Positions 50,599-55,104 are shown, counted from the stretch's first letter. The stretch: 64,000 nt of DNA from Histomonas meleagridis 2922-C6/04-290x (GCA_020184695.1 JAANOX010000268.1:62001-126000); one strand, 5' to 3'. The notes: generated by a model from the letters alone, not told the origin. Numbers and translations: made by a program.

Positions 50599-52479
50599 TT
50601 ACATTTGATTAATGAATTTCTCTTCTTTGAAATCATCTGCAAATGGATCTTCTTCAATATTTGATATAGATATTCCTGTTGTGAATGTATTTGTAGTTTG
50701 GTTGTTATCATTTTGTTGTTCTGAAATTTCATTTTCAGCAAATTCTTCTTTTTTATTTTTAATTCGTATTAATAATATTATAAGTAATGAAATTATAATA
50801 ATAACAACAACAATAACGCAAACGATTATGATGATGATTGTTGTTTTGCTATCATTTGTTTGAAATTCATTGTTATAAATAAATGTAAAGAAGTTCGAAT
50901 AATAAATATAATAAGTTGAATAAATAATAACTGTGTAATCATAATATATAAATTCTGTTTCAATATAAATATTCGATGAATTAATTGTAATTAGCGAAAG
51001 TGATCTTGTTTGTATTTCAGAATAAGTAAATGAATGCGTAATTGATAATGTGATCGTTAATAGATATGAAAAAGATTTCGTTAAATCGTTTTGAAATGAC
51101 TGAGTAAATGTATGTGACTTAAAATATGTATTACTATGACTGAATGAATTTAATACTGAAAATGTATTTGACTTAGAGAATGTATTACTATGACTGAATG
51201 TATGTGATGATGAAAACGAAAGTGTTGATATTGGTCTGCAGTTCCCTTCAGCTGTTTTGCTGTTGACTGATAATTCTCCAAATGTCTTGTCGACATATGT
51301 TGGATATGTTATAACTGTTGTCGTAACATTATAAAATGCACCCAATCCAATATTTGGTTCTGTTTCGCCATAATAATAAATGCATTCAAGTCCATAACAA
51401 TTACCAAACGCTGAACCTCCAATTTCTTTGATTCCATACCCAAGTGTTAATATTCTTAATTGAGAACAGAATGAAAATGCTGAACCACCAATTATTATAA
51501 CTGAATTTGGAATTGTAATGTTTCCGATCGATGAACAGAATGAAAATGCTGAACCATAAATTGTTGTAACATTTTCGCCAAAAAGAATAATTTCTAATCG
51601 TGGACATGAAGAGAACGCATAACTCCCAATATTTGATATAGAATTACCAAGATTAACTGAAATAACTTTTAACCAATTTGCAAATGAATTCCTTGGAATG
51701 GTATAAATTCCTTCATTAATGTTGACAAATTTCGTGATGTTTTTATATTGTTCAATTTCATTAAAATCATTTGAGTTTGTTATTGTTAATGTTAAATTAT
51801 TATTATCATAAAATATTTGATAAGAATTCATGAAAAATATAACAAAAATTAAAACATTTTTGTGTTTTTTCTTTTCGCTTGTTTTCAATTCATAGTTGGT
51901 CAATAAAAATTTCTGTAGAAAAAGTGGTTTTTTCTGAAAAAAATTGATATAAACCACCACAATCATAATTGAAAAAACGGCGGTTAAACGAGCAAATGCA
52001 TTGAATTTAAATGGTCGGTCTGTTTTATCGTTTTGCATCAATGAGGAACAAAGAAATTTCCTCTGGATCAAAGATATATTCTCACAACATCTTTTCATGG
52101 TTTGCTTTGATGGATTGTTTTCAATAAACATAATGGTTGTATGGGATTTATTTTGGGTAAATGTAAAATGTGATGCTGAGAATTTTATTTTGCCATTAAA
52201 TATTTGAAGCATAACAAATGTATGCTCTACTTCAGTGAGGAAATGTAAAAATAAACTGGTTTTAAAGAAATTGGAAATTGTGTTAAATATATCAAATTTC
52301 TGATACTTAATTTCAAAGATCGGATCTTCTGCATTGTACCCATGTGTGAATGCTTCTTTGCTTAGGATCTTTTTCATATTTGATATTTTTATAGTTGTAA
52401 AACATGGGATTTCTGGTAACATACTGTTTCCAAATTGCTTTCTTATGAACGAAATGAGCAGCAAACGAAGAATTTTCAT
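50599..52479 (-). CDS. BspA-like (TpLRR) single-pass surface protein, copy 1, with long unrelated N-terminal extension
   Basis: TpLRR repeats (IGSYAFSSC, ITIPNSV), Ser/Thr-rich stalk, TM, EEDPFADDF tail; internal ATG at 51831; start uncertain. Confidence 0.85.
   Translation of the reverse strand: MKILRLLLISFIRKQFGNSMLPEIPCFTTIKISNMKKILSKEAFTHGYNAEDPIFEIKYQKFDIFNTISNFFKTSLFLHFLTEVEHTFVMLQIFNGKIKFSASHFTFTQNKSHTTIMFIENNPSKQTMKRCCENISLIQRKFLCSSLMQNDKTDRPFKFNAFARLTAVFSIMIVVVYINFFQKKPLFLQKFLLTNYELKTSEKKKHKNVLIFVIFFMNSYQIFYDNNNLTLTITNSNDFNEIEQYKNITKFVNINEGIYTIPRNSFANWLKVISVNLGNSISNIGSYAFSSCPRLEIILFGENVTTIYGSAFSFCSSIGNITIPNSVIIIGGSAFSFCSQLRILTLGYGIKEIGGSAFGNCYGLECIYYYGETEPNIGLGAFYNVTTTVITYPTYVDKTFGELSVNSKTAEGNCRPISTLSFSSSHTFSHSNTFSKSNTFSVLNSFSHSNTYFKSHTFTQSFQNDLTKSFSYLLTITLSITHSFTYSEIQTRSLSLITINSSNIYIETEFIYYDYTVIIYSTYYIYYSNFFTFIYNNEFQTNDSKTTIIIIIVCVIVVVIIIISLLIILLIRIKNKKEEFAENEISEQQNDNNQTTNTFTTGISISNIEEDPFADDFKEEKFINQM
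51190..51887. repeat. Recent duplication of a BspA cassette; partner at about 53910-54605
   Basis: Near-identical by direct comparison over about 700 bp; homology starts abruptly at tgaaaacaagcg on the coding strand. Confidence 0.95.
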
Positions 52480-53400
52480 GCTTCAAGACCCAATATAGCT
52501 AAGGCCTTTGCTAAATACACATCGGCCCATACAAAAGTTAAAAATCGCACGGTTAATATTTAAAAAATTTATTGTTTGATTGAAGTTTTTCAATTTAACC
52601 TAAATTTTTTTGTTTCAATATTTAAATTAAACCCAGAAAAGATGCTGAATTAAATGTTTTTAAAGGCACTTTTAAATAATTTAATGAATGGATGTGATAA
52701 AGCTTGATTTGTTGATCAAAATGATATACTTTTGTTGTTGGAAAACACTTTTTAAAGTTATTTGTTTTCATTATTTTCAAGAAATATGAAATTTTGTTTA
52801 TGTTCATCTGTTTTACTTGATGCATAATAAGTCCTTAAAGACATATCATATATAAATATGATTTATTCATTAAAAGATAAAATATTAATGCATGTTTGTA
52901 AATATTAAAGTAAATTATTACACAACCTCCATCATGTTACTTATAAATTAATGAATGTGTGAACGGTAAATAAATTGTGAATATGTAAGAAAAAGATAAA
53001 TCACTTTGAAGATGTGCTTGAATAAGCATCTTAGAATATAATTAGCAAATCATAATATTAATATGTAAAATTATTATATTTAATAACACTTATAATATTT
53101 CTCTTGATTTGGTTCATCAAAAAATCATCAGATATTATCTTCATATACATTGTTTTATAATTAATGATATCAAAAGTGAGTGCGTAAACATGAATATCTG
53201 TTACAAACTATAAATCATTTCGTCAATAACTGCTTTAATATGATAACATTTTTGTCTTTAGGATTTTGCCTCAAAACATTATATATATTATAAATCGATT
53301 AACATTTCAAACATTATCATTTCTCATTGCGGATCACTTCATACTATTTTAAATATATAAAAATATATCAATTAAAAATATATTTTTATTTTACATCAAA

Positions 53401-55104
53401 TCATAGCCAATTGTCTTCATCATCTTCTTTAACAATATCTTCAATTAAAGTATTTACGTCTTCAATTTGTTTTGTACTTGATGTAGTTGAATCTTTAAAT
53501 TGTAATTTCGAAGTCGATTTTCCTTTTTTATTATTACTCTTTATTAAGAACATAACAATTCCAATAATTATTAATATAAATGCAATTGATCCGCAGATAA
53601 TTCCAATCAAAGCAATAATTGTAATTCCATTTGTTTGTAAAATGTTTGTGTGAAACATTGTAATGAAGTTTGAATAATAATTATAATATGTTGAATATAT
53701 AATAACTGTGTAATCATAATAAATAAATTGCGTTTCGAGATAAGAAAATGTTGAGTTAAATATGGATAATGAAAGTGATCTTGTTTGCGTTTCATAATAT
53801 GTAAATGAGTACGAAATTGTGAGTGTATATGTTAATGTATATGAAAATGAAAATGTTAAATCGCTTTGAAATGACTGAGTAAATGTATTTGACTTAGAAT
53901 ATGTATTACTATGACTGAATGTGTGTGATGATGAAAACGAAAGTGTTGATATTGGGCTGCAGTTCCCTTCAGCTGTTTTGCTGTTGACTAGTAATTCTCC
54001 AAATGTCTTGTCGACATATGTTGGATATGTTATAACTGTTGTCGTAACATTATAAAATGCACCCAATCCAATATTTGGTTCTGTGTCGCCATAATAATAA
54101 ATGCATTCAAGTCCATAACAATTACCAAACGCTGAACCTCCAATTTCTTTGATTCCATACCCAAGTGTTAATATTCTTAATTTAGAACAGAATGAAAATG
54201 CTGAACCATCAATTATTATAACTGAATTTGGAATTGTAATGTTTTCGATCGATGAACAGAATGAAAATGCTGAACCATAAATTGTTGTAACATTTTCGCC
54301 AAAAAGAATAATTTCTAATCGTGGACATGAAGAGAACGCATAACTCCCAATATTTGATATAGAATTACCAAGATTAACTGAAATAACTTTTAACCAATTT
54401 GCAAATGAATTCCTTGGAATGGTATAAATTCCTTCATTAATGTTGACAAATTTCGTGATGTTTTTATATTGTTCAATTTCATTAAAATCATTTGAGTTTG
54501 TTATTGTTAATGTTAAATTATTATCATAAAATATTTGAAAAGAATTCATGAAAAATATAACAAAAATTAAAACATTTTTATGTTTTTTCTTTTCGCTTGT
54601 TTTCAGTTTGTTCATCAAAAATTTAATTTCATAGAATAATAAAAATCCTAAAATAAAAAAGTTACACATCAGAACTTGAATAGTTTCAATGAATTTGAAC
54701 ATTTTATTAATGAAACTTTTCTTCATCGAATTTGCTAAATGAACCTTTAATGAAAAATAATTATGTACGAAAGAAAAGAATTTGAAATATTGCTTAACAT
54801 ATGAAATTGGTAATTCAAATAAAGGGAAATACCATTGGTATTTTCCTGCACTGATGTTAAATAGATCAGATTCATTATCTTTTAGCATAATAAATTTTTT
54901 TACTTTAATAGATACATTCGCTTTGTCATGGGATGAGAATGTAAAGTATATACCTCCTTTGGATTCTGAAGTAAGGCAAATGGAGTGTTTGAAAGTTTGA
55001 GAAATAGATAATTGATCAGTAAAAATCTTTGAATCTGAATTTTGTGGAGAGGTTTGTAATAAGCAAAAGAAATACATAGGGAAAGCCGAGAAGAAGAAAC
55101 ACAT
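53401..55104 (-). CDS. BspA-like single-pass surface protein, copy 2, with a different N-terminal extension
   Basis: Same LRR core as copy 1, shorter stalk, distinct TM and tail; internal ATG at 54549; start uncertain. Confidence 0.85.
   Translation of the reverse strand: MCFFFSAFPMYFFCLLQTSPQNSDSKIFTDQLSISQTFKHSICLTSESKGGIYFTFSSHDKANVSIKVKKFIMLKDNESDLFNISAGKYQWYFPLFELPISYVKQYFKFFSFVHNYFSLKVHLANSMKKSFINKMFKFIETIQVLMCNFFILGFLLFYEIKFLMNKLKTSEKKKHKNVLIFVIFFMNSFQIFYDNNLTLTITNSNDFNEIEQYKNITKFVNINEGIYTIPRNSFANWLKVISVNLGNSISNIGSYAFSSCPRLEIILFGENVTTIYGSAFSFCSSIENITIPNSVIIIDGSAFSFCSKLRILTLGYGIKEIGGSAFGNCYGLECIYYYGDTEPNIGLGAFYNVTTTVITYPTYVDKTFGELLVNSKTAEGNCSPISTLSFSSSHTFSHSNTYSKSNTFTQSFQSDLTFSFSYTLTYTLTISYSFTYYETQTRSLSLSIFNSTFSYLETQFIYYDYTVIIYSTYYNYYSNFITMFHTNILQTNGITIIALIGIICGSIAFILIIIGIVMFLIKSNNKKGKSTSKLQFKDSTTSSTKQIEDVNTLIEDIVKEDDEDNWL

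What the first reader, a model, noticed from the sequence alone, without database searches (positions are those of the whole stretch)
50599..55104. BspA cassette with a disabled ATG, captured in frame by two unrelated upstream ORFs
Both copies of a recently duplicated BspA unit begin with a UTR-like A-rich leader followed by ATG TTT TAA (ATG at 51857 and 54575). That ATG is one base out of frame with the signal-peptide-like LIFVIFF and the LRR body. Homology between the copies stops abruptly at 51887/54605. Beyond that point each copy is preceded, in the LRR frame, by a different stop-free stretch: about 195 codons (to 52479) and about 165 codons (to 55104, with its own signal-like MYFFCLLQ). 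Two such long open frames are very unlikely by chance in DNA this AT-rich. This looks like modular assembly of surface proteins, in which a shared LRR-stalk-TM cassette is joined to variable N-terminal modules through its former 5' UTR. The leftover hydrophobic segment would become an internal TM.
Basis: partly seen in the sequence, partly recalled or inferred. Interest (0 to 1): 0.75.

Follow-up and report, generated by a model that had tools for sequence, protein, structure and literature searches.

The report
Paired Histomonas BspA genes sharing a converted core
The two long reading frames are real surface-protein genes of the poultry parasite Histomonas meleagridis, one of about fifty tandem "B then A" gene pairs in which the leucine-rich-repeat middle is kept identical between the two partners by gene conversion while their front ends, promoters and cytoplasmic tails stay different; the "disabled ATG" is a coincidence.

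Summary
The sequence facts hold. There are two minus-strand ORFs (626 and 567 aa) and an out-of-frame ATG-TTT-TAA at 51857 and 54575. Homology starts abruptly at 51887/54605. Unrelated stop-free stretches of 198 and 167 codons lie upstream.

The "former 5' UTR / disabled ATG / recent capture" reading fails. The genome is the attenuated H. meleagridis assembly. It holds about 62 type-B and about 80-100 type-A N-terminal modules, and 49 B loci have an A module 2.3-4.9 kb downstream on the same strand. In 21 pairs studied:
- the start codon sits at a fixed distance from the junction;
- the 170-290 nt upstream of it are conserved by type;
- the out-of-frame ATG is ATA or ACG in 13 of 42 genes, changes that are silent or conservative in the long frame;
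- no copy has T5.

Each pair shares a roughly 690-nt core (basic loop, second hydrophobic segment, LRR) at a median 99.5% identity, against 83% between pairs. N-modules, upstream regions, the last TM and the tails are type-specific. This is tandem-pair concerted evolution inside a three-TM BspA-like architecture. The N-modules are orphans with no confident fold. The scan had noted this architecture on other DNA of this genome. Transcript and protein evidence is still missing.

The parts
53401..55104 (-). Gene B (upstream partner), 567 aa: signal-like start, type-B N-module, TM1, basic loop, TM2, LRR, Ser/Thr stalk, TM3, type-B tail
   Evidence: ORF list and translation. Pfam LRR_5 E 7.7e-24. 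Type-B module recurs at about 62 loci.
50599..52479 (-). Gene A (downstream partner), 626 aa: same architecture with a type-A N-module and type-A tail
   Evidence: Pfam LRR_5 E 7.4e-24. Type-A module gives 104 matches in the genome. Collinear over its full length with metagenomic protein P0001.
54604..55104 (-). Type-B N-terminal module (167 codons, starts MCFFF...)
   Evidence: The distance from ATG to junction is 166-168 codons in 17 of 21 pairs. Alignment A3 has 79% mean column identity. No Pfam hit. AF2 pLDDT 39.7.
51886..52479 (-). Type-A N-terminal module (198 codons, starts MKIL...)
   Evidence: The distance from ATG to junction is 197-198 codons in 15 of 21 pairs. Alignment A2. No hit among 1.84 billion representatives. 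AF2 pLDDT 29.7.
53922..54605 (-). Converted core of gene B (basic loop KTSEKKKHKN, hydrophobic VLIFVIFF, LRR domain)
   Evidence: Within-pair identity is 0.98-1.00 from 0 to about +690 in all 21 pairs.
51201..51887 (-). Converted core of gene A; includes the junction motif at 51871-51887 and the out-of-frame ATG at 51855-51857
   Evidence: For 41 of 42 cores the tandem partner is the nearest neighbour.
51388..51741 (-). LRR_5 (BspA-type) domain match in gene A (residues 247-364)
   Evidence: 84.5 bits against a cut-off of 27.7.
54109..54462 (-). LRR_5 (BspA-type) domain match in gene B (residues 215-332)
   Evidence: 84.4 bits.
51934..51999 (-). Hydrophobic segment TM1 of gene A (residues 161-182)
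   Evidence: Kyte-Doolittle scan. AF2 models a helix at 152-181 at low confidence.
54616..54684 (-). Hydrophobic segment TM1 of gene B (residues 141-163)
   Evidence: AF2 models a helix at 125-166, pLDDT 53-65.
51811..51855 (-).
   Evidence: Marginal hydropathy (1.98). The topology is inferred.
54529..54573 (-). Short hydrophobic segment TM2 of gene B (residues 178-192)
50602..50852 (-). Type-A TM3 and cytoplasmic tail, ending ...EEDPFADDFKEEKFINQM
   Evidence: The tail is near-invariant among A genes. dN/dS is 0.22, against 0.8-1.3 in shifted frames.
53404..53640 (-). Type-B TM3 and cytoplasmic tail, ending ...EDVNTLIEDIVKEDDEDNWL
   Evidence: dN/dS is 0.34, against about 1.0-1.2 in shifted frames.
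52480..52770 (-). Type-A conserved upstream non-coding block (putative promoter / 5' UTR)
   Evidence: Mean pairwise identity among 15 paralogs is 0.81-0.91 from -1 to about -260. It falls below 0.55 beyond -290.
55105..55275 (-). Type-B conserved upstream non-coding block (putative promoter / 5' UTR)
   Evidence: Identity among 17 paralogs is 0.75-0.92 from -1 to -170 and decays beyond.

Best explanation
The region holds one of about fifty head-to-tail two-gene units (B upstream, A downstream) of a BspA-like surface-protein family of Histomonas meleagridis. Each gene is a single long ORF read from its own ATG (55104 for B, 52479 for A), behind its own type-specific conserved upstream region. 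The inferred protein order is: signal-like hydrophobic start, an orphan N-terminal module (type A 198 aa, type B 167 aa, unrelated in sequence), TM1, a short lysine-rich loop, a short hydrophobic TM2, the BspA-type LRR, a Ser/Thr-rich stalk, TM3, and a type-specific, strongly conserved cytoplasmic tail. The A tail carries EDPFA / FxDxF-like motifs. The B tail carries a DxxxL[IV] motif and an acidic end. A stretch of about 690 nt, from the loop to the end of the LRR, is repeatedly homogenised between the two partners of a unit by gene conversion. The tract is bounded on both sides by sequence that is not, or only poorly, homologous between the types. As a result each unit shows one LRR ectodomain on two different chassis, while units differ from each other by about 17%. 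The out-of-frame ATG TTT TAA is a chance reading of the codons AAT GTT TTA. Shown: the ORFs, the two module types, the pair order, the mosaic of identities, selection against stop codons, and the constraint on the tails. Inferred: transcription starts, membrane topology, sorting function of the tails, and any selective value of the shared core.
For: The genome is identified by 281 contigs and 43,133,364 bp, the figures of Table 1 of PMC8529796. The junction motif occurs 128 times at up to 2 mismatches, against 41 for the control, often in pairs. Upstream sequences fall into two types only. There are 104 type-A and 68 type-B module matches. By hand-pairing the coordinates, 49 of 62 B loci have an A module 2.3-4.9 kb downstream on the same strand. 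All 21 pairs fetched are B then A. Median within-pair identity is 0.64 upstream of the junction, 0.99 at 0-100, 0.995 in the LRR, 0.78 in the stalk and 0.68 in the tail. Between pairs the LRR is at 0.83 whatever the type, A modules at 0.80 and B modules at 0.82. For 41 of 42 cores the nearest neighbour is the tandem partner, and the distance matrices of A module, B module and core correlate at rho 0.55-0.59. The ATG-to-junction distance is fixed, and the upstream 170-290 nt are more conserved than the coding sequence. A neutrally drifting module would stay open with P about 0.03-0.04 at 10% divergence, yet 15 of 21 A and 17 of 21 B modules are intact. Copies at only about 30% protein identity still sit in open frames of 590-650 aa. 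At the junction 'ATG' position the counts are 29 ATG, 7 ATA and 6 ACG, with none T5. Tails are type-specific, with dN/dS 0.22 and 0.34. An independent relative, P0001 from an ENA metagenome, shares at most 45% identity with anything in this genome. It is collinear with gene A from Met 1 to the tail.
Against: No transcript, ribosome or peptide evidence could be reached here. The N-modules show no measurable constraint on residue identity. Their dN/dS of 0.69 and 0.62 equals that of the shifted frames, and there is no third-position excess. AlphaFold gives no confident fold. They have no relatives in Pfam, the ESM Atlas or 1.84 billion representatives. What they do is therefore unknown, and only their openness is clearly selected. 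TM2 is short and only marginally hydrophobic, so the three-TM topology is an inference. About a quarter of the copies carry stops or shifts, so some units are decaying.
Confidence: 0.85

Rival explanations
1. A BspA cassette with its own 5' UTR, ATG and signal peptide lost its start through a one-base change in a T run. It was then recently captured, in frame, by two unrelated upstream ORFs.
For: ATG TTT TAA is present in both window copies. The lysine-rich stretch followed by VLIFVIFF looks like the n- and h-regions of a signal peptide. The A and B modules are unrelated.
Against: The ATG is not conserved: 13 of 42 genes have ATA or ACG, changes that are silent or conservative in the long frame. 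No copy has T5 and no intact copy begins at the junction. The same two modules recur at about 49 loci, with a fixed start codon and conserved upstream blocks. The arrangement also exists in a relative at 38% identity. Any fusion is therefore ancient, not a recent capture through a UTR.
Confidence: 0.04
2. The N-modules are not translated. They would be long 5' leaders or separate upstream genes, with the functional protein starting near the LRR.
For: There is no detectable constraint on residue identity in the N-modules. They have no fold and no relatives. The window copies have an in-frame Met (MNS...) just after VLIFVIFF.
Against: Frame 0 has no stop in 198 and 167 codons, while the other frames have 10-16. 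The frame stays open in most paralogs despite about 20% DNA divergence, and in copies at about 30% protein identity. The in-frame Met after the junction is Ile (ATA) in most copies. No stop separates module and LRR, so they cannot be separate genes.
Confidence: 0.06
3. The near-identity of the two cores is an assembly or polishing artefact of a nanopore plus short-read assembly, not biology.
For: The assembly was made from ONT reads and polished with mapped Illumina reads (PMC8529796). Short reads can mis-map between repeats.
Against: Cores of different pairs differ by about 17%, far beyond what polishing would erase. Within-pair identity varies from 0.92 to 1.00, and the window pair differs by several substitutions and a 3-nt indel. 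The boundaries fall at the same nucleotides in 21 loci on 17 contigs. The partners lie only 2.6-4.8 kb apart, within single long reads.
Confidence: 0.02
4. On origin only, and compatible with the main explanation. A and B descend from one tandemly duplicated gene. Their ends diverged beyond recognition while conversion froze the middle. No domain shuffling brought in unrelated modules.
For: The two genes have the same architecture: hydrophobic start, a module of about 150 aa, TM1 20-45 residues before the junction, and TM3 plus tail. The stalk is still about 75-80% identical between types. The N-modules evolve nearly neutrally, so fast divergence is plausible.
Against: hhalign finds nothing between the A and B modules (probability 0.2%). 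Identity drops from 0.99 to background within a few bases in every pair. The tails are strongly constrained yet unrelated between types. T. vaginalis has separate BspA subfamilies with tail motifs of each kind (PMC2843621), which suggests two old lineages.
Confidence: 0.35

Closest known systems
TvBspA proteins of Trichomonas vaginalis with a transmembrane domain and cytoplasmic tail (Noel et al. 2010, PMC2843621)
   Same: Both have the BspA-type (TpLRR, Pfam LRR_5) ectodomain, a repeat-rich stalk, a C-terminal TM and a short cytoplasmic tail. Both families are large, contain pseudogenes and show tandem clustering. In both, tail subfamilies carry sorting-type motifs. The [DE]D[PS]FA motif of one TvBspA subfamily matches EDPFA in the Histomonas A tail. 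The dileucine-type motif of the other subfamily resembles DxxxL[IV] in the B tail.
   Different: The Histomonas proteins carry a 167-198 aa orphan module plus two further hydrophobic segments in front of the LRR. The genes come as fixed B-then-A pairs. The LRR is homogenised within a pair. The TvBspA paper does not mention gene conversion at all (0 occurrences), and I found no description there of such an N-module or pairing.
The 94 BspA-motif proteins reported for H. meleagridis (Palmieri et al. 2021, PMC8529796)
   Same: It is the same genome and the same Pfam motif. The paper notes that more than 80% of them have at least one TM, and it describes one LRR protein with four predicted TM helices and very similar copies elsewhere in the genome.
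   Different: The paper has no occurrence of 'tandem' or 'gene conversion'. It states that the LRR_5 motif is N-terminal. The two N-module types, the pair organisation and the pair-specific core are not described there.
Concerted evolution by segmental gene conversion between tandem paralogs, as in many multigene and surface-antigen families (general knowledge)
   Same: Paralogs within a locus are more alike than the same genes at different loci. The tract is limited to a homologous segment and the flanks are divergent.
   Different: Here the pattern is replicated about fifty times with the same two boundaries. It couples one variable ectodomain to two constant chassis that differ in promoter, N-module and tail.

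Membership tests
BspA-like / TpLRR surface proteins (Pfam PF13306 LRR_5) | LRR_5 domain scoring above Pfam's gathering threshold | tested here: met
   84.5 and 84.4 bits against a cut-off of 27.7. Hundreds of LRR_5 proteins were found as homologues.
BspA-like / TpLRR surface proteins (Pfam PF13306 LRR_5) | C-terminal transmembrane domain followed by a short cytoplasmic tail (the TvBspA TMD-CCT class) | tested here: met
   Strong hydrophobic segments at residues 543-575 (A) and 491-524 (B), followed by tails of about 45-55 residues. This rests on a hydropathy scan only; no dedicated predictor was available.
BspA-like / TpLRR surface proteins (Pfam PF13306 LRR_5) | Conserved tail with sorting-type motifs as in the TvBspA subfamilies | tested here: met
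   EDPFA in 13 of 14 intact A genes, the exception being L050, which carries a B-type tail. D/E-x-x-x-L-[IV] in the B tails. Motif classes are from PMC2843621. Function is not tested.
BspA-like / TpLRR surface proteins (Pfam PF13306 LRR_5) | Cell-surface location and adhesion | not testable with these tools
   This needs antibodies or tagging in the parasite.
Concerted evolution by gene conversion between tandem paralogs | Paralogs within a locus are more alike than same-type genes between loci | tested here: met
   0.995 within pairs against 0.83 between pairs. For 41 of 42 cores the nearest neighbour is the partner.
Concerted evolution by gene conversion between tandem paralogs | A discrete tract whose flanks keep the older, type-specific divergence | tested here: met
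   The column-wise mosaic has the same 5' boundary in 21 pairs and a 3' boundary near +690. One pair (L050) has a tract that runs on through the tail.
Concerted evolution by gene conversion between tandem paralogs | Conversion events seen directly, between strains or passages | not tested
   29 ATG, 7 ATA and 6 ACG among 42 genes. The ATG is never in the LRR frame and no copy has T5.
   Only two types occur, each conserved at about 80% DNA identity with a fixed start.

The most novel reading that the evidence does not exclude
The BspA repertoire of H. meleagridis is built from about fifty two-gene units. In this reading selection, and not only the mechanics of recombination, keeps the ligand-binding LRR identical on two chassis that differ in promoter, outer N-module and cytoplasmic sorting tail. 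One binding specificity would then be deployed in two ways, for example surface display versus endocytic uptake, or expression at two stages. Differences between units would supply antigenic and ligand diversity.
Probability: 0.3. Interest if true: 0.65.

Novelty: new variant of a known kind. Interest (0 to 1): 0.45.

Why it matters
BspA-like proteins are the main candidate adhesins of trichomonads, and H. meleagridis causes a poultry disease for which there is no licensed treatment. If most of its BspA genes come as fixed pairs, that changes how the family should be annotated, counted and typed. The features that matter are a pair-specific shared ectodomain, an undescribed N-terminal module, a probable three-TM topology and two distinct conserved tails. 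The genome paper itself reports that PCR assays for such loci were confounded by near-identical copies. The result also gives a clean natural example of conversion tracts with fixed boundaries replicated many times in one genome. Finally, it corrects a tempting but wrong reading, the 'disabled start codon'.

Tried and rejected
- hhalign of the A against the B N-modules found no relation.
- Pfam on the N-modules alone gave nothing.
- A word-indexed search with residues 1-198 of gene A gave nothing.
- An HMM of 15 type-A modules against 1.84 billion representatives gave 0 hits.
- The ESM Atlas gave no usable hit for A. For B it gave only scores of 0.77 or less, to unrelated families.
- AlphaFold2 on both module alignments gave pLDDT 29.7 and 39.7. 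That is too low for a fold search.
- Exact look-up of ten full-length ORFs found none in the collection. How public annotation models these genes therefore stays open.
Pairs with the divergent A subtype (about 30% identity) could not be examined for core homogenisation.
- The JGI metagenome scan with the full-length A alignment returned only three LRR-level matches and no N-module.
- The parabasalid 3' intron motif had no site in these genes.
- The bacterial promoter and terminator scan was at chance level and is irrelevant for a eukaryote.
- dN/dS as proof of coding in the N-modules was rejected after the shifted-frame control gave the same values. The argument for translation rests on stop avoidance instead.

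
Full report
WHAT IS THERE

On the minus strand lie two ORFs, 53401-55104 (567 aa, here gene B) and 50599-52479 (626 aa, gene A). Both score 84 bits on Pfam LRR_5, the BspA-type repeat, against a cut-off of 27.7.

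- ATG TTT TAA sits at 51857 and 54575, one base out of the long frame.
- The two copies become alignable exactly at TGAAAACAAGCG (51887/54605) and are then about 98-99% identical.
- Upstream lie 198 and 167 stop-free codons.
- The other five frames of these stretches carry 10-16 stops each.
- At the window's composition (stop probability 0.078 per codon) such open stretches have chances of about 1e-7 and 1e-6.

One correction is needed. The shared part ends after about 690 nt (51201/53922). It is followed by a 54-nt indel and then a stalk at 75-80% identity. After that come a last transmembrane segment and a tail that are unrelated between the two genes.

WHOSE GENOME

The assembly has 281 contigs and 43,133,364 bases. 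These are exactly the figures given for the attenuated strain of Histomonas meleagridis in Table 1 of PMC8529796. One homologue found is named as a Histomonas protein by NCBI.

THE DECISIVE COMPARISON: THE REST OF THE FAMILY

- **Junction motif.** The 17-nt junction occurs 128 times at up to two mismatches, against 41 for the reversed control. It is often found in pairs 2.6-4.8 kb apart.
- **Two upstream types.** In 30 loci the sequence upstream of the junction falls into just two types. One starts MKIL... and has 197-198 codons from Met to the junction (type A, as in 50599-52479). The other starts MCFFF... and has 166-168 codons (type B, as in 53401-55104).
- **Copy numbers.** Searched as proteins in the whole genome, module A gives 104 matches and module B gives 68. 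Most lie inside open frames of 560-650 aa.
- **Pairing.** Pairing the coordinates by hand, 49 of 62 B loci have an A module 2.3-4.9 kb downstream on the same strand. All 21 pairs I could fetch (the window plus L031-L050, on 17 contigs) are B first, then A, head to tail.

The upstream ORFs are therefore not accidents at this locus. They are two conserved gene fronts.

THE 'DISABLED ATG'

Among the 42 genes of the 21 pairs the triplet is ATG in 29, ATA in 7 and ACG in 6. In the long frame the codons read AAT GTT TTA, AAT ATT TTA and AAC GTT TTA, which give N-V-L, N-I-L and N-V-L. No copy has five T. The in-frame Met just downstream (MNS in the window) is ATA in most copies.

No start codon near the junction is therefore conserved, while the far-upstream Met is. 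The A-rich 'leader' is the coding sequence of a lysine-rich loop (K-T-S/C/N-E-K-K-K-H/Q-K-N).

WHERE EXPRESSION PROBABLY STARTS

The 170-290 nt in front of each long-ORF ATG are conserved among genes of the same type at 0.81-0.92 mean pairwise identity. That is higher than in the coding N-modules (0.70-0.89). Conservation collapses further upstream. The A and B blocks differ from each other. I read them as type-specific promoter and 5' UTR regions. This is an inference, since no transcript data were reachable. No parabasalid intron motif lies in the genes.

THE MOSAIC

| Region | Within a pair (A vs B) | Between pairs |
|---|---|---|
| 300 nt before the junction | 0.64 median (alignment background) | N-modules, same type: A-A 0.80, B-B 0.82 |
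| First 100 nt after the junction | 0.99 median | – |
| LRR | 0.995 median | 0.83 for A-A, B-B and A-B alike (no type signal) |
| Stalk | 0.78 median | – |
| Tail region | 0.68 median | – |

The column by column comparison gives the same picture:

| Position relative to junction | Within-pair identity | Same-type identity between pairs |
|---|---|---|
| -150 to -1 | 0.29-0.44 | 0.79-0.89 |
| 0 to +650 | 0.98-1.00 | 0.72-0.92 |
| +1000 to +1300 | 0.44-0.62 | 0.78-0.92 |

For 41 of 42 cores the nearest neighbour is the tandem partner. The between-pair distances of A module, B module and core correlate (rho 0.55-0.59), as expected if pairs were copied as units. The 5' boundary is at the same nucleotide in all 21 pairs.

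In one pair (L050) the A gene carries a B-type tail, so a tract there ran through the 3' end.

This is concerted evolution. Conversion recurs between the two partners and is confined to the stretch where they are homologous enough. 'Recent duplication' cannot explain it, because the A/B split must predate the spread of the pairs, yet the partners are far more alike than the pairs are.

ARE THE N-MODULES TRANSLATED?

The case rests on openness:
- In a simulation of substitutions without selection, a module stays open with P of about 0.03-0.04 at 10% divergence from the ancestor, and 0.002 at 20%.
- Even so, 15 of 21 A modules and 17 of 21 B modules are intact with an unchanged length.
- A-type copies at only about 30% protein identity still sit in open frames of 590-650 aa.

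I must add a caveat. dN/dS in the modules (0.69 and 0.62) is no lower than in the two shifted frames (0.62-0.80), and there is no third-position excess. The residues are thus barely constrained on average, although blocks such as TT.KISN, NDK..RP.KFN and KKMFKF are invariant or nearly so. The LRR core is only weakly constrained too (third-position excess of 0.188 against 0.145 and 0.149). The tails are strongly constrained (dN/dS 0.22 and 0.34, against about 0.8-1.3 in shifted frames).

The picture is of fast-evolving outer parts and a conserved inner part, as expected for exposed parasite proteins.

WHAT THE MODULES ARE

That is unknown. All of the following drew a blank:
- Pfam.
- 5.8 billion proteins by word search.
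- 1.84 billion representatives by HMM.
- The ESM Atlas.
- AlphaFold, with no confident model (pLDDT 30 and 40).
- Comparison of A with B (hhalign probability 0.2%).

One outside relative exists. P0001 is a 605-aa protein from an ENA metagenome. It is collinear with gene A from Met 1 through module, TM1, basic loop, TM2, LRR, stalk and TM3 to the tail ...EEDPFADDFKEDKFINQI. Its module matches at hhalign probability 92% (E 7e-7) and the whole protein at 38% identity. Its best match in this genome is only 45% identical, so it comes from another organism or lineage. The architecture is therefore old.

TOPOLOGY (INFERRED)

A hydropathy scan gives the following for each protein:
- a hydrophobic start;
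- TM1 (A residues 161-182, B residues 141-163);
- a loop of about 27 residues rich in lysine;
- a short hydrophobic TM2 (A 209-223, B 178-192);
- a strong TM3.

With the basic loop inside the cell, the N-module and the LRR would both face outwards and the tail inwards. TM2 is marginal, so this needs testing. TM2 does look like the n- and h-regions of a signal peptide.

THE TAILS

The A tails contain EDPFA followed by DDF. The B tails contain D/E-x-x-x-L-I/V and an acidic end...EDEDNWL. Noel et al. describe two TvBspA subfamilies with conserved tails in T. vaginalis. One has a dileucine-type signal. The other has [DE]D[PS]FA plus an NPXY-like signal. They proposed endocytic sorting for these (PMC2843621). 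The Histomonas A and B tails resemble these two classes in motif content. That the two partners of a pair are sorted differently is my inference.

COMPARISON WITH WHAT IS KNOWN

These genes are members of the BspA-like family (LRR_5, C-terminal TM and tail). The Histomonas genome paper counts 94 BspA-motif proteins, most of them with a TM. It has no occurrence of 'tandem' or 'gene conversion'. The T. vaginalis paper describes tandem clusters and tail subfamilies but never mentions gene conversion. As far as I could check, three things are new here:
- the two orphan N-modules with extra hydrophobic segments;
- the fixed B-then-A unit copied about fifty times;
- the pair-specific converted core with constant boundaries.

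Earlier first-stage notes of this scan describe the same architecture (s1-309714) and segment exchange among BspA copies (s1-298765) on other pieces of this genome. They are unchecked notes, and I reached the architecture before reading them.

LIMITS

- There is no expression evidence.
- No dedicated TM or signal-peptide predictor was available.
- About a quarter of the copies carry stops or frame breaks. I describe them only as disrupted.

VERDICT

The 'disabled ATG / captured UTR' interpretation is rejected. The 'modular' flavour is partly right, in an older and more orderly form. This is a new variant of a known kind, of moderate interest.

Noticed in passing
window 52480-52770 (-) and 55105-55275 (-): The non-coding blocks in front of the A and B start codons are more conserved among paralogs (0.81-0.92) than the coding N-modules, and they are locally richer in G+C. 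They are probably type-specific promoters or leaders. No known parabasalid initiator consensus was obvious by eye.
   Followed up: partly
window 52511-52522 (-): A three-codon mini-ORF (ATG TGT ATT TAG) lies about 40 nt upstream of the gene A start. Its ATG TGT ATT is kept in all 15 type-A leaders examined; the fourth triplet is TAG in about half of them and TGG in the rest. It may be a regulatory uORF or mere conservation of the leader.
   Followed up: no
L033, L035, L036, L040, L047, L048, L049 versus the other pairs: There are two spacing classes between the B and A junctions, 2.6-3.1 kb and 4.2-4.8 kb. The longer class has about 1.5-2 kb of extra intergenic DNA. In L047 this extra DNA holds no ORF of 80 aa or more.
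   Followed up: partly
L050 (G000:C34:26900-32300): The A gene of this pair carries a B-type TM and tail, and within-pair identity stays at 0.82 in the tail region. Here the conversion tract ran beyond the usual 3' boundary.
   Followed up: partly
window 51147-51200 (-): Gene A has a 54-nt (18-codon) insertion of Ser/Thr-rich stalk repeat units relative to gene B, exactly where the near-identical core ends. The repeat-length variation may act as the 3' barrier to conversion.
   Followed up: no
G000 contigs C255 (83799-92080) and C34 (25031-32000): Some loci hold B-A-A or B-A-A-A arrays instead of simple pairs. About 25-30 type-A genes, mostly the divergent subtype at about 30% identity, have no B partner nearby.
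   Followed up: no
L024 (G000:C61:475973-478989): This is a truncated B-type copy whose remaining frame begins with a Met four codons before the junction. It would read as a lysine-rich stretch plus a hydrophobic segment, like a classical signal peptide. It is a decayed copy, not an intact gene.
   Followed up: no
P0001 (ENA metagenome contig of 2070 nt): This is the only relative with an A-like N-module found outside this genome. It shares at most 45% identity with any copy in G000.
   Followed up: partly
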